A stretch of DNA of 64,000 nucleotides from Chrysemys picta bellii (lineage: Eukaryota), in assembly GCF_011386835.1 (NCBI RefSeq), contig NC_088814.1:806001-870000 (forward strand), written 5' to 3'. Below, piece after piece: positions 9,617 to 18,468 of this stretch. Position 1 is the first letter of the stretch, and each line of letters opens with the position of its first letter. The notes under the pieces were generated by a model. That model saw only the letters and a program-made list of their open reading frames with translations, did not search any database and had not been told where the DNA came from. The position numbers were made by a program, and so were the translations under genes.

Positions 9617-9635
9617 GGGAAACGAAAGTGAAAGT
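9617..9635. promoter_or_regulatory. ISRE/IRF element in the promoter of the RBM43/Deltex-like gene
   Basis: gggaaacgaaagtgaaagt contains three GAAA cores at IRF spacing. Confidence 0.8.
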
Positions 9636-9648
9636 CCGAGAGGAGCTG

Positions 9649-9856
9649 CCCCCCCCCTCCCGCGGGACCCGCCCCGCCCCTACAGCCCCCCCCCCCCGCG
9701 GGACCCGCCCCGCCCCTACAGCCCCCCCCCCGCGGGAGCCGCCCCGCCAGCCCCCCCCCCCCCCCCCCCGCGGGAGCCGCCCCGCCCCTACAGCCCCCCC
9801 CGCCCCGCGGGACCCGCCCCTCCACCCCACCCCCCGCGGGACCCGCCCCGCCCCTA
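9649..9856. repeat. GC-box-rich minisatellite (about 6 copies, 34-37 bp, cgcgggacccgccccgcccctacag core)
   Basis: cgcggga recurs at about 9661, 9697, 9731, 9769, 9806 and 9835. Confidence 0.85.
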
Positions 9857-10486
9857 GTCATGCTGGGGTCTGTCTGTCCTGCTGGGTGTGCAACCCCCTC
9901 CCCCCGCAACCCCCAGGAACCTCTGCCTGCATGGCCCACCCCACGGACAAGGACCTGACCCCACACCTGCCAGGGCCCCCTGCCCAGCGGGCTAATGCAG
10001 CCCTGCTCCCAGCAGTGCCGTGGGGCTGACGCACAGTGACAGCACGGCTGGGTGTCACACGCCCCTGCCACACCAGCGGGGGCAGAAATTCAGGGTGGGG
10101 AATCCCTGAATAACCCTCCTTTGAGACCACATCACCATGTAAACATCAGAGTTCGGCTAAACACTGACCCCCCCAGGCTCCAAACTCATTTGTTAACCCT
10201 GCACCCTGCTGGAAAGAGGGGTCCGAGCGGGGCCTAAACACTATTGGGTGTGGTGGGCAGAGACCCACGGCTCATTTCACTCCATTCCATGCCCGCGTCG
10301 CCCATTCTGGGTGTTGTCGCCAGCCAGGGCTTCGTGGAGAGCACCCCGGGCCTGCTCACTGCGCTGAGCGAAAACAGGACGCTCCGAAATGGGGTTCTCT
10401 TGCCCCATGGCTCTCACACGATCCTTCTCTCCCTGCTCGTGCCCAGCTCCACAACACCGCAGATCCACACTCGGCCCTGACAATAC

Positions 10487-10492
10487 TTTAAT
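10487..10492 (-). terminator. IFI35 polyadenylation signal (ATTAAA)
   Basis: tttaat on + strand, about 110 nt after the stop codon. Confidence 0.5.
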
Positions 10493-16600: not shown

Positions 16601-17564
16601 TCGCCATCCCCAGCTCTAGCCGGTCTTGTTCCAGCGCCTGACAGCGTTCCTGGGAGAGACACCGAAGGGAACGTCAGGCTCCCCGGGGCTGCTCTGCAAG
16701 GCTACACCCAGGCACTATCAGCCCAGAATCGTCTCGGGCTGGGCCTCTATTAACCGCACACTGCGGAGGGAACTGCAGCTGGTAGGCGCATTCGCAGCTC
16801 CTGCCCCATCCCGCCATCGGCTCACGTGCCCAACCTGCAGTGCCTGGCAGGGACCCACCTTGTATTTCTCAATCTCCTGCTGCAGGCGTTCGGGTGTCAT
16901 CTCGGGGGAGCTGTTCTCCAGTGTGAGCTCATCAGGCAGACGGACAAAAGACTCCTAAAAGCCAAGAGAGGTGAGTGACCCCAGAGCCCACACGCTGTAT
17001 CACGGGGCAGCCCGTGCCATGGGCTATACCAGTCACCATCTGCACATGAGCTCTCTAGCTCCACCAGCACAGGGGTCAGCATTCAATGTGGGTGGAGCCA
17101 GAGGGGTGGGGGTGGAGCCAGAATCCACATGGGGGTGGGGAAGAAACTTTCCTGCTGGACTCAGGCTGTTCCTTTGCCCGGTGTGGTGTCCAGCTCCCGC
17201 GCTCAGGGCTCATCTAGACTCAAAGCGCTGCAGCTGGGCTGCTGTAGCACTTCAGTGAAGACGCTGCCCACGTGGACGGGAGGGGTAATGCACCTCAGAG
17301 AGGCGGCCAGTCGACGGGAGAGCGCTGTCTACACCAGGGTTAGGTTGGGTGAGCTGCGTCTCTCGGGGGGGGGGGGGGAGGTTGGATTTTTCACACCCCT
17401 GAGCGACGGAGTTATACAACCCTAATTTCCTAGTGAAGACCAGGCCTCAAACAAACAACCTCCTGGTGCCCTCCCGGGAAACGTTAATTTCCACTTTGGC
17501 TTTCAAAAGCCCAGGACAGGGACTGACTCGCCTGGTGCCCAGTTACCTCTTCTGAATCTGTCAT
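10604..17564 (-). CDS. IFI35: Interferon-induced protein 35, 380 aa
   Basis: Coding exons 17564-17547 (MTDSEE), 16954-16859, 16649-16491, 14237-14124, 13495-13351, 12998-12877, 12008-11819, 11540-11434 and 10795-10604 total 1143 nt. There is an N-terminal coiled coil, then NID motifs LLDKLELFFSKEKNGGGEV and DALEIHFQKPSRGGGEV. Synteny with RPL27 agrees. One donor (16490) has to be GC. Confidence 0.92.
12050..12230. repeat. 47-bp minisatellite, about 4 copies
   Basis: ggctgcctgggacatggcagg recurs at 12061, 12108, 12155 and 12202. Confidence 0.9.
12350..12765. repeat. 47-bp minisatellite, about 9 copies
   Basis: cacagccc...cagcgtgcgagaggc recurs at 12366, 12413, 12460 and onward. Confidence 0.9.
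13864..13979. mobile_element. hAT-type MITE with perfect 8-bp TSD
   Basis: TIRs tagggtgacca / tggtcacccta. TSD cctccgag at 13856-13863 and 13980-13987. Confidence 0.9.
14309..16362. repeat. About 2-kb 44-bp minisatellite with 65-bp variant units, G-rich on the IFI35 sense strand
   Basis: Unit cccctgccaccccagccctgcgcgtccctcacacccacccgcag. Variants carry an added cccactcagctctgctatt segment at about 15480-15960. Confidence 0.95.
17205..17447. mobile_element. Turtle-type GTCTACACT-ended MITE (Harbinger-like)
   Basis: Degenerate TIRs agggctcatctagact / agtgaagaccaggcct, with internal cacacccctgagcgac...gttatac motif. Confidence 0.7.
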
Positions 17565-18400
17565 TGTGTCACTCACACCTGGGGAGAGAAAGCACCAAAG
17601 TATCAGAATCTGGCACCAAAATCAACCCCCCCTCCCCGAATCTCCCCCATCAGCACCATGCTGAGCATTGGCTCTCCAGTGATAGGGGCGCGTCACGCGG
17701 GGGAGCATAGACTGCCAAGCATACACCGGTCTCCTGGACCTGGGCCTTCCTGACTCGCCCGTCACTGGAGCGTGGAGCATTTCTCCAGGCTCAGGGGGGT
17801 GAGGAGGCTTGGGGTGACAGATGAGCGCTCACCCCATGTTCACCGCAGGTCACTCTGATCTGATTGCGCCCCCCCCCCCCCTTCAGGACTGGCCCTGCCC
17901 TTCACCTGCAGGTGCCCAGAAACCCCAGGGAGCGACAGGAGACACAGTCTAAAGGGAGGGTTGGCTCCCAAATGTCAGGCTGGGACCAGTTCCCAGATGG
18001 GGGGCAAATGGGCCCTGTTCCCGTGGGGCTGGTGCCCGGTCCCCAGGACTGCAACACCCCAGGGTGGGAGGGAATCCCTGGAACGGAGCACAAAGGGGCT
18101 CCCCTGGTCACCCCACACAGGGACTTGGGGAGGCAGCGCCCCTGGGGCACCTGGGCTGGAAACAATGAGGGTGGGGCTCTGCCAGACCCCAGGGAGGGGG
18201 CACAGAGCCCCCCCCCCCCCGAGTGGGGAGAACACTGGGAGACCCTCTAAAAAGGGGGTGGACTGTACAAGCCCCTAACACCCTAGCGGACCCAGGGCAT
18301 GCAATGGGCCCCACACACCCCGGGGCAGGGACCGCCCCCCCAGCACCCCGGGGCTCAGAGCAGGGCGCCCCCCCCATGCGGAATTTGCAGCCCCTCTCAC

Positions 18401-18450
18401 CGCCCCAGCATCCAGCAGCGGCGTCGGCGCTTCCTGCCTGACTCCGGCCC
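18401..18450 (-). other. IFI35: Putative non-coding first exon of IFI35
   Basis: Donor GCG|GTGAGA at 18401, directly downstream of the ISRE. The ATG exon has an acceptor ttctctccccag| at 17578. Confidence 0.6.
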
Positions 18451-18468
18451 CTTTCACTTTCGTTTCCC
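18451..18468. promoter_or_regulatory. ISRE/IRF element in the IFI35 promoter
   Basis: ctttcactttcgtttccc is the reverse complement of gggaaacgaaagtgaaag. IFI35 is a known interferon-stimulated gene. Confidence 0.85.

What the first reader, a model, noticed from the sequence alone, without database searches (positions are those of the whole stretch)
9617..18468. Identical 18-bp ISRE in the promoters of IFI35 and its neighbour
gggaaacgaaagtgaaag occurs at 9617-9634 and as its exact reverse complement at 18451-18468. Each copy is 40-50 nt upstream of the donor of a short non-coding first exon in a CpG island. Inference: the two genes form a co-induced interferon module, supporting an innate-immune role for the uncharacterised gene.
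Basis: partly seen in the sequence, partly recalled or inferred. Interest (0 to 1): 0.8.

Follow-up and report, generated by a model that had tools for sequence, protein, structure and literature searches.

The report
Shared interferon switch on neighbouring genes
Two adjacent painted-turtle genes, IFI35 and an unstudied ubiquitin-ligase gene not found in mammals, each begin at the same 18-letter interferon-response element, conserved in turtles, birds and a lizard; interferon probably switches both on, which is a sound but ordinary kind of gene control.

Summary
GGGAAACGAAAGTGAAAG occurs exactly twice in the window, at 9617-9634 (+) and 18451-18468 (-), with none expected by chance.

Both genes lie on the minus strand, head to tail. 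IFI35 has the element in the forward sense, 50 nt before its exon-1 donor. LOC101953675 of Chrysemys picta bellii has it inverted, 39 nt before its exon-1 donor.

- **Conservation:** both elements sit at the same place and in the same orientation in other turtles and in birds. The neighbour's element is also present in Anolis.
- **Known counterpart:** the IFI35 element matches the experimentally proven human IFP35 ISRE at 15 of 18 positions, in the same TATA-less GC-box context.
- **Start sites:** chicken cDNA contigs of the neighbour begin at the edge of its element.
- **The neighbour's domains:** it has an IFI35/NMI-like NID domain, a KH-like region, a cysteine-rich stretch (putative RING) and a clear Deltex C-terminal domain. 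Orthologues occur in sauropsids and amphibians. No mammal was among the 120 listed hits.

The exact identity mostly reflects strong constraint: 10 of 18 positions never vary and four vary often. There is no flanking homology, so this is not a duplication.

Interferon induction of the neighbour was not tested. Verdict: a real, conserved pair of ISRE promoters, and a new member of a known kind.

The parts
18451..18468 (-). IFI35 promoter ISRE/IRF-E (triple GAAA), forward relative to the gene
   Evidence: Exact match. Orthologous copies lie in the IFI35 promoters of Platysternon, Pelodiscus, Grus, Rhea and Gallus. It matches the functional human IFP35 ISRE at 15 of 18 positions.
18481..18489 (-). 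GC box (GGGGCGGGG) with 12 nt between it and the IFI35 element
   Evidence: A GC box 16-29 nt upstream of the element start recurs in the other turtles, Grus and Gallus. The human IFP35 promoter has two functional GC boxes.
18401..18450 (-). Body of the IFI35 non-coding exon 1, from the element to the donor (GT at 18400-18399); the 5' end is not mapped
   Evidence: The donor GGTGAG is conserved in three turtles. The long Pelodiscus NCBI isoform translates across this exon into exon 2. The ATG at 18412 is absent in Platysternon.
17526..17578 (-). IFI35 exon 2 with the start codon (ATG 17564-17562)
   Evidence: tblastn of an emydid IFI35 protein (P0141); acceptor and ATG read.
10604..16963 (-). 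Remaining IFI35 coding exons (coiled coil plus two NID domains), stop codon TGA at 10606-10604
   Evidence: tblastn of P0141, Pfam NID hits, stop codon read.
10487..10492 (-). IFI35 polyadenylation signal ATTAAA
   Evidence: Chicken has the same signal about 40 nt after its stop codon.
9648..9856 (-). 36-bp tandem array (about 6 copies) holding repeated GC boxes, upstream of the neighbour's element in gene sense
9617..9634 (-). ISRE/IRF-E of the neighbour (LOC101953675), inverted relative to the gene
   Evidence: Exact match. It is conserved in place and orientation in Emydura and Platysternon (exact), Pelodiscus (1 change), Grus and Gallus (2), Rhea (3) and Anolis (4).
9578..9616 (-). Body of the neighbour's non-coding exon 1, from the element to the donor (CAG|GTACCG, GT at 9577-9576); the 5' end is not mapped
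   Evidence: Sequence and donor are conserved in four turtles and similarity decays after the donor. Anolis has CAG|GTACGA at the same distance. Probable-RNA runs hold 2-3 of 15 sampled words here, which is weak support.
7660..7723 (-). Alternative upstream coding exon used by NCBI isoform X1 of the neighbour
   Evidence: tblastn of P0122, sequence read. It has no CpG-rich context.
6643..6834 (-). Neighbour exon 2: ATG at 6820, first half of the NID/RRM-like domain
   Evidence: Pfam NID E=3e-8.
6221..6324 (-). Neighbour exon 3
   Evidence: The spliced model reproduces P0001.
2073..5000 (-). Neighbour exon 4 (976 codons): KH-like region, long low-complexity middle, cysteine-rich stretch (putative RING), start of the DTC domain. 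The last exon lies outside the window.
   Evidence: 100% identical to P0001. Pfam results. The DTC domain aligns to DTX2 and DTX3L structures.

Best explanation
The two 18-mers are genuine interferon-stimulated response / IRF-binding elements at the core promoters of two tandem minus-strand genes.

- **IFI35:** exon 1 ends at 18401 and the ATG is at 17564.
- **LOC101953675:** exon 1 ends at 9578 and the ATG is at 6820. It encodes a 1162-aa E3 ligase with an IFI35/NMI-type NID domain, a KH-like region, a cysteine-rich stretch (putative RING) and a Deltex C-terminal domain.

Each promoter is TATA-less. GC boxes lie upstream, the triple-GAAA element lies at or next to the start site, and a short non-coding first exon follows.

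Inferred mechanism: interferon or virus signalling loads IRF1/IRF2 and ISGF3 (STAT1-STAT2-IRF9) onto both elements, so the two genes are raised together. The elements are identical because this element type leaves few free positions, not because of a recent duplication.

- **Shown here:** the sequences, gene models, domains, synteny, conservation of both elements and donors, and the positions where the chicken cDNA contigs begin.
- **Inferred:** factor binding, interferon induction of the neighbour, and the exact turtle start sites.
For: - **Occurrence:** the exact pair has 0 matches expected by chance.
- **Gene models:** tblastn of NCBI proteins and a spliced model reproduce P0001.
- **Synteny:** RUNDC1-RPL27-IFI35-neighbour-VAT1 is fully seen in Grus, Rhea and Gallus and partly in the turtle loci. 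Anolis shows only neighbour-VAT1.
- **Neighbour's element:** it is kept inverted at the same place in Emydura, Platysternon, Pelodiscus, Grus, Rhea, Gallus and Anolis.
- **IFI35 element:** it is kept forward with a GC box 16-29 nt upstream in turtles, Grus and Gallus; Rhea keeps the element without a detected box.
- **Donors:** those 35-56 nt after the element are conserved in turtles and Anolis.
- **Chicken cDNA contigs:** those from different runs begin at genome positions 9748, 9750 and 9720, while the element is at 9731-9748.
[quoted passage not shown] That ISRE binds IRF-1 and IRF-2 and is needed for basal and IFN-gamma-induced activity (PMC3514179). Its sequence matches the turtle element at 15 of 18 positions.
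- **ISGF3:** its components bind at human IFI35 (PMC10743977).
- **Birds:** chicken and duck IFI35 are interferon- or virus-induced (PMC6963425, PMC8320746).
- **Neighbour's domains:** DTC E=2e-31 and NID E=4e-13. The N-terminus hits solved IFI35 and NMI NID structures.
Against: - No expression or induction data were obtained for the neighbour in any species.
- Logan contig ends are not true 5' ends. Two chicken contigs extend further upstream, one as an IFI35 read-through.
- NCBI isoform X1 of the neighbour uses another upstream exon at 7723-7660, so a second start region may exist.
- NCBI models of Pelodiscus and Dermochelys IFI35 translate through the element. In those models the element lies inside exon 1, not upstream of it.
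- The turtle 18-mer fits the IRF-E form (GAAAGTGAAAG) better than the strict ISRE core GAAANNGAAAC[T/C], which it misses by one base. IRF1/2 rather than ISGF3 may therefore be the main reader.
Confidence: 0.75

Rival explanations
1. The two elements are kept identical by an active process, not only by independent purifying selection. This could be short-tract gene conversion between the inverted copies, or co-evolution of both sites with lineage-specific IRF/ISGF3 preferences.
For: All three turtles with both sites known are 18/18 identical within species. Pelodiscus carries the same A6-to-G variant in both copies. The turtle neighbour element has T13/G18 like IFI35, whereas birds and Anolis have C13/C18. 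Rhea's two copies are 17/18 identical and share C1 and C18. Within-species identity (mean 16.3) exceeds cross-species pairings (mean 15.4), and only 28 of 720 label permutations reach it.
Against: There is no homology beyond 19 nt, which is far below what recombination-based conversion normally needs. Ten positions never vary and only four (1, 6, 13, 18) vary often, three of them between just two states, so random toggling produces matches often. Two independent draws from the observed column frequencies are identical with P about 0.04. The permutation test is confounded by phylogeny. Gallus is only 12/18 identical.
Confidence: 0.12
2. The copy at 9617-9634 does not mainly serve the neighbour. 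It could be a 3' enhancer or looping partner for IFI35, or the promoter of a plus-strand antisense transcript.
For: It lies only about 850 nt beyond the IFI35 poly(A) signal in the turtle and about 220 nt in chicken. On the plus strand it reads in the 'forward' sense. A chicken contig joins IFI35 exons to the neighbour's first exon.
Against: The downstream exon-1 donor is conserved in turtles and Anolis. Chicken cDNA contigs of the neighbour begin at the element. GC boxes lie on the neighbour's upstream side. In Anolis the element, GC box and donor persist although no IFI35 exon is found in the 2.6 kb upstream.
Confidence: 0.08
3. The match is a coincidence, a repeat or transposon fragment, or a recent local duplication with no regulatory meaning.
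For: The surrounding DNA is repeat-rich: GC-rich tandem arrays at 9648-9856 and SINE-like inverted copies at 13864-13985 / 18651-18781.
Against: Zero matches are expected in shuffles. Both copies are at orthologous positions in species that diverged in the deep Mesozoic or earlier. The copies share no flanking similarity. The human counterpart is functional.
Confidence: 0.02

Closest known systems
Human IFI35 (IFP35) promoter ISRE (Yang et al. 2012, PMC3514179)
   Same: It is the orthologous gene with the same TATA-less architecture: GC boxes immediately upstream of an ISRE that sits at heterogeneous start sites. The element GGAAATGAAAGTGGAAG matches the turtle 18-mer at 15 of 18 positions. 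In human cells it binds IRF-1 and IRF-2 and is needed for basal and IFN-gamma-induced transcription.
   Different: Binding and induction were not tested in the turtle. The turtle element has a perfect third GAAA where human has GGAA. The turtle has a second, inverted copy at the next gene. Human IFI35 is, from my memory of the human map, followed directly by VAT1.
Canonical ISRE / IRF-E (PRDI-type) elements of interferon-stimulated genes such as ISG15, IFIT2 and OAS1 (consensus from general knowledge)
   Same: It has GAAA repeats with 2-nt spacing, a GGGAAA 5' end, a promoter-proximal position and orientation independence. The birds' neighbour element GAAAGCGAAACC fits the strict ISRE core GAAANNGAAAC[T/C].
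   Different: The turtle version ends GAAAG, which is the IRF-E form and one base off the strict ISRE core. It has three GAAA units spaced 1 and 2 nt apart.
PARP9-DTX3L interferon-responsive gene pair (general knowledge; for current DTX3L literature)
   Same: An interferon-regulated Deltex-family E3 with an RRM/KH-like N-terminal part, a RING (putative in the neighbour) and a DTC domain sits beside a partner interferon-stimulated gene. The DTC domain aligns to DTX3L at E=6.5e-22.
   Different: PARP9 and DTX3L are head to head on one bidirectional promoter. Here the genes are head to tail, each with its own element. The neighbour's N-terminal domain is closer to IFI35/NMI NID structures. A 2026 comparative study of 'all five DTX paralogs' does not mention IFI35, VAT1 or RBM43.
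RBM43 (beside NMI in human, from memory, not checked here)
   Same: The first 360 residues of the neighbour resemble RBM43 clusters (NID + KH_I_RBM43) in the atlas feature search, with score 0.90 and 174 shared features. Chicken RBM43, NMI, DTX3L and PARP9 proteins all rise on IBDV infection (PMC11532768).
   Different: RBM43 has no RING or DTC domain. The atlas hit is a lead, not an alignment. A paralogous NMI-RBM43 / IFI35-neighbour relationship is an inference.

Membership tests
ISRE / IRF-E cis-element | Match to the consensus (GAAANNGAAA core; strict ISRE GAAANNGAAAC[T/C]; IRF-E AAA[G/C][T/C]GAAA[G/C][T/C]) | tested here: met
   Both copies hold GAAAGTGAAA. The neighbour's copy also fits the full IRF-E pattern. 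The strict ISRE core is missed by one base in turtles (G for C) but met by the bird orthologues of the neighbour's element.
ISRE / IRF-E cis-element | Promoter-proximal position at an interferon-stimulated gene | tested here: inconclusive
   The element lies 39 and 50 nt before conserved exon-1 donors. Chicken cDNA contigs begin at the element.
ISRE / IRF-E cis-element | Evolutionary conservation at orthologous promoters | tested here: met
   10 of 18 positions are invariant across 15 elements from turtles, birds, Anolis and human. Orientation is fixed for each gene.
ISRE / IRF-E cis-element | Bound by ISGF3 and/or IRF proteins | not testable with these tools
   Known only for human IFI35: IRF-1/IRF-2 EMSA and ChIP in PMC3514179, ISGF3 ChIP-seq in PMC10743977.
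ISRE / IRF-E cis-element | Confers interferon inducibility on the gene | not tested
   The literature supports this for IFI35 in human, chicken and duck. Nothing was found for the neighbour.
CpG-island promoter | GC above 0.5 and CpG observed/expected above 0.6 over at least 200 bp | tested here: met
   In 200-300 bp around each site GC is 0.75-0.84 and observed/expected is 0.65-0.79. The values are not sustained over 1 kb.
Deltex (DTX) E3 ligase family (the neighbour) | Deltex C-terminal (DTC) domain | tested here: met
   Pfam DTC E=1.9e-31, above the curated cut-off. It aligns to DTX2, DTX3L and DTX1 structures at E=1e-20 to 1e-22. The IHHKT motif reads IPHKT.
Deltex (DTX) E3 ligase family (the neighbour) | RING finger directly before the DTC domain | tested here: inconclusive
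   A cysteine-rich stretch (CDACQ...C..CGHALC..C) precedes the DTC domain. UniProt names orthologues 'RING-type E3 ubiquitin transferase'. No Pfam RING model scored in my scans.
Deltex (DTX) E3 ligase family (the neighbour) | DTX3L-type KH-like domain | tested here: inconclusive
   KH_DTX3L scores E=0.007 and 16.6 bits, below the 27.4-bit cut-off. Precomputed KH_I_RBM43 hits are marked weak or faint.
NMI/IFI35 family (IFI35 itself) | Two NID domains after an N-terminal coiled coil, in conserved synteny beside RPL27 | tested here: met
   NID E=1e-59 in two stretches, exons mapped, RPL27 upstream.

The most novel reading that the evidence does not exclude
IFI35 and LOC101953675 may form an ancient two-gene interferon module. 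In this reading an NID-bearing Deltex-type E3 ligase (an RBM43-like head on a RING-DTC tail, a possible sixth DELTEX member) was lost in mammals. It would be paralogous to the NMI-RBM43 pair and analogous to PARP9-DTX3L. Its two start-site elements would be kept in step by concerted evolution, and the ligase's NID domain would dock on IFI35/NMI.
Probability: 0.2. Interest if true: 0.6.

Novelty: new member of a known kind. Interest (0 to 1): 0.42.

Why it matters
- **Candidate gene:** this finding gives a sequence-level reason to treat an unnamed gene as a candidate interferon-stimulated gene. The gene is conserved in turtles, crocodilians, birds, tuatara, squamates and amphibians. It encodes a Deltex-type ubiquitin ligase with an IFI35-like domain. 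In my searches, including a 2026 survey of the DELTEX family, no paper describes it.
- **Relevance to poultry and reptiles:** in chicken the protein has been labelled 'IFI35 isoform X1' in one annotation, which could confuse expression studies. For poultry and reptile immunology this is a concrete gene to test.
- **Age of the promoter design:** the IFI35 layout of GC box plus start-site ISRE is shared by human, turtles and birds, so it predates the mammal-sauropsid split.
- **Limits:** the regulatory logic itself is textbook.

Tried and rejected
- **Read laying:** No turtle RNA reads, junctions or 5' ends could be seen.
- **Second run search:** I searched the 161-nt promoter stretch. Three probable-RNA runs hold 2-3 of 15 words. 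That fits a short exon 1, but even DNA runs hold few words there, so I treat it as weak.
- **The look-up of encoding contigs:** the look-ups for Gavialis, Emydura IFI35 and Dermochelys IFI35 found nothing on record. No crocodilian locus and no pleurodire IFI35 promoter were examined.
- **Literature searches:** searches for the neighbour by LOC numbers, UniProt accessions and 'DTX3L-like' found nothing.
- **N-terminal homologue search:** a search with the first 360 residues found no mammalian protein. The method needs shared 5-mers and a length window, so this is not proof of absence.
- **Complex prediction:** IFI35 against the neighbour's NID domain gave no verdict (score 0.04). This counts neither for nor against binding.
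- **Earlier scan notes:** a look-up by place found nothing and one by words gave no note on this locus.
- **Duplication origin of the two promoters:** rejected, because the match stops at 19 nt and the orientation relative to each gene is opposite.
- **Transposon origin:** rejected because of orthologous conservation.
- **ATG at 18412 as the IFI35 start codon:** rejected, because it is absent in Platysternon and emydid IFI35 proteins start in exon 2.
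Full report
**Observation.** The 18-mer GGGAAACGAAAGTGAAAG occurs at 9617-9634 on the plus strand and at 18451-18468 on the minus strand. There is no other match at up to two mismatches and none in 100 dinucleotide-preserving shuffles. The perfect match is 19 nt long and similarity ends there. In the whole window these are the only two triple-GAAA motifs and two of only three GAAANNGAAA matches.

**Anatomy.** Both genes are on the minus strand, head to tail.

- *IFI35.* Mapping an emydid IFI35 protein (P0141) onto the window places the start codon at 17564 in exon 2. Coding exons run down to the stop at 10606-10604, and an ATTAAA signal lies at 10492-10487. Upstream, the minus strand reads in this order: a GC box at 18489-18481, 12 nt of spacer, the element, 50 nt, then the donor GT at 18400-18399.
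- *The neighbour.* It is 100% identical to LOC101953675 isoform X2 of Chrysemys picta bellii (P0001, 1162 aa). Splicing 6820-6643, 6324-6221 and 5000-2073 reproduces that protein. The last exon lies beyond the window start. Exon 2 begins 14 nt before the ATG, so a non-coding first exon is required.
- *The neighbour's promoter.* On the minus strand a 36-bp tandem array of GC boxes (9856-9648) comes first. The element follows in inverted sense, then 39 nt, then the donor CAG|GTACCG at 9578/9577.
- *CpG content.* Both sites sit in short CpG-rich patches with GC 0.75-0.84 and observed/expected 0.65-0.79 over 200-300 bp.

**What the neighbour is.** It is not featureless.

- Pfam gives a clear Deltex C-terminal domain (E=2e-31) and an N-terminal NID/PARP14-type RRM domain (E=4e-13). 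A DTX3L-type KH hit falls below threshold.
- Against solved structures, residues 2-87 hit the IFI35 and NMI NID domains (E about 1e-7). The C-terminus hits DTX2, DTX3L and DTX1 (E=1e-19 to 1e-22).
- The first 360 residues resemble RBM43 clusters in the atlas feature search (score 0.90). That is a lead only.
- Full-length orthologues are found in turtles, a gharial, many birds, tuatara, squamates, caecilians and salamanders. No mammal is among the 120 listed hits.
- One chicken annotation calls the protein 'interferon-induced 35 kDa protein isoform X1'.
- I found no paper on it. A 2026 preprint that surveys 'all five DTX paralogs' mentions neither IFI35 nor VAT1.

- *Synteny.* The order RUNDC1-RPL27-IFI35-neighbour-VAT1 is fully seen in Grus, Rhea and Gallus and partly in the Pelodiscus, Emydura and Platysternon loci. 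Anolis shows only neighbour-VAT1.
- *Neighbour's element.* It is present, always inverted relative to the gene, in Emydura and Platysternon (exact), Pelodiscus (1 change), Grus and Gallus (2), Rhea (3) and Anolis (4).
- *IFI35 element.* It is present, always forward, in Platysternon (exact), Pelodiscus (1), Grus (3), Rhea (4) and Gallus (4). A GC box lies 16-29 nt upstream in the turtles, Grus and Gallus.
- *Neighbour's exon 1.* In four turtles the segment from the element to CAG|GTACCG is conserved and similarity decays after the donor. Anolis has CAG|GTACGA at the same distance, 7.3 kb upstream of its ATG.
- *IFI35 donor.* It is conserved in three turtles. The long NCBI Pelodiscus isoform reads from exon 1 straight into exon 2, which confirms that junction.

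So the element is conserved, and the refutation test fails to refute.

**Start sites.** I could not lay turtle reads.

- *Chicken.* Chicken gives indirect evidence. Five Logan cDNA contigs carry the complete 1151-aa ORF. Mapped on the chicken genome locus, they begin at 9748, 9750, 9720 and 9499. The fifth continues from spliced IFI35 exons. The element is at 9731-9748. Three of the five therefore start within about 11 nt of the element. Contig ends are not true 5' ends.
- *Turtle.* Three probable-RNA runs hold 2-3 of the 15 sampled words of 9540-9700. That fits a short exon, but the evidence is weak.
- *Alternative exon.* NCBI isoform X1 of the neighbour uses another upstream exon at 7723-7660. 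A second start region cannot be excluded.

**Comparison with what is known.** The human IFP35 promoter was dissected experimentally (PMC3514179).

- It lacks a TATA box and has two GC boxes and one ISRE.
- Mutating the ISRE removes 83% of basal activity and all of the IFN-gamma response.
- IRF-1 and IRF-2 bind the ISRE.
- 5' RACE gave start sites 163 and 183 nt before the ATG.
- From the primer coordinates in that paper I infer that the ISRE lies between those two start sites. This assumes the primers abut.
- The human element GGAAATGAAAGTGGAAG matches the turtle 18-mer at 15 of 18 positions.

The IFI35 copy is therefore the orthologue of a proven element, and the design of GC box plus start-site ISRE predates the mammal-sauropsid split. 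ISGF3 components bind at human IFI35 (PMC10743977). Chicken and duck IFI35 are interferon- or virus-induced. Relatives of the neighbour (DTX3L, RBM43, NMI, PARP9) rise at the protein level in IBDV-infected chicken cells.

**Why the two copies are identical.**

- Against random sequence the match is astronomically unlikely, but that is the wrong null.
- Across 15 elements (7 IFI35, 8 neighbour), 10 of 18 positions never vary and four more vary in a single sequence each. Positions 1, 6, 13 and 18 vary often, and 6, 13 and 18 vary between only two states.
- Two independent draws from the observed column frequencies are identical with P about 0.04.
- There is no flanking homology and the orientation is opposite, so a duplicated promoter is excluded.
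- One intriguing residue remains. All three turtles with both sites known are 18/18 identical within species, including Pelodiscus, where both copies carry the same A6-to-G change. The turtle neighbour element also has the IFI35-like T13/G18 instead of the C13/C18 of birds and Anolis.
- Only 28 of 720 label permutations reach the observed within-species identity. That test is confounded by phylogeny, and Gallus is only 12/18.
- I rate concerted evolution at about 0.12.

**Rival readings.**

- *A 3' enhancer of IFI35, or an antisense promoter.* Four points argue against this. The downstream donor is conserved. The chicken contigs start at the element. The GC boxes are placed on the neighbour's upstream side. 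In Anolis the module persists with no IFI35 exon in the 2.6 kb upstream.
- *Chance or a transposon.* This is excluded by orthologous conservation.

**Also tried.** A complex prediction of IFI35 with the neighbour's NID domain gave no verdict.

**Verdict.** These are two conserved ISRE/IRF-E start-site elements on adjacent genes. One is the orthologue of a characterised human element. The other belongs to an undescribed Deltex-type ligase with an IFI35-like domain.

- *Still inferred:* co-induction by interferon.
- *Kind of system:* the regulatory logic is ordinary, so I class this as a new member of a known kind.
- *Where the interest lies:* in the unstudied ligase gene and, more speculatively, in the in-step evolution of the two elements.
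- *Scores:* interest 0.42, and confidence in the main explanation 0.75.

Noticed in passing
L012:4083-4100 and L012:12047-12064 (Pelodiscus sinensis): Both elements carry the same A6-to-G variant, so the pair is again 18/18 identical within the species. This may reflect concerted evolution or shared tuning, but the statistics are weak.
   Followed up: partly
L006:1-1486 (chicken Logan contig) against L011:7937-10178: One cDNA contig joins spliced IFI35 exons, without a break, through the intergenic 500 nt into the neighbour's first exon. This is either IFI35 read-through transcription or an assembly merge of overlapping transcripts.
   Followed up: partly
window 14309-16362 and 12047-12765: A 44-bp minisatellite (about 41 copies) and 47-bp arrays lie inside IFI35 introns. 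They create stop-free frames of 685-767 codons on the plus strand that are not genes.
   Followed up: partly
window 13864-13985 and 18651-18781: Inverted copies of about 120 nt (84-85% complementary), probably a SINE. One lies 200-300 nt upstream of the IFI35 element and the other in an IFI35 intron.
   Followed up: no
window about 18376-18394 (minus strand, just after the IFI35 exon-1 donor): The block GGGGCTGCAAATTCCGC at the start of intron 1 is conserved in Chrysemys, Platysternon and Pelodiscus. This is unusual for intron sequence and may be a further regulatory site.
   Followed up: no
window 53862-53873 (+): GAAATGGAAACC is the only match in the window to the strict ISRE core. It lies outside any CpG-rich patch and its gene context was not examined.
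   Followed up: no
P0001 residues about 1125-1131 (last exon, outside the window): The DTC motif that reads IHHKT in DTX2 and DTX3L reads IPHKT in the neighbour, so the first histidine is replaced by proline. The effect on ADP-ribose-linked activity is unknown.
   Followed up: no
window 1194-1730 (-): A fragment of a CR1-type LINE reverse transcriptase lies in the neighbour's last intron.
   Followed up: no
window 7660-7723 (-): An alternative exon adds 26 residues (isoform X1, P0122) ahead of the normal start codon. It lies in CpG-poor DNA 1.9 kb downstream of the element.
   Followed up: partly
L005:1-2627 (Anolis carolinensis): No IFI35-like NID exon lies upstream of the neighbour's promoter within the fetched flank. 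IFI35 may be displaced or lost in Anolis.
   Followed up: partly
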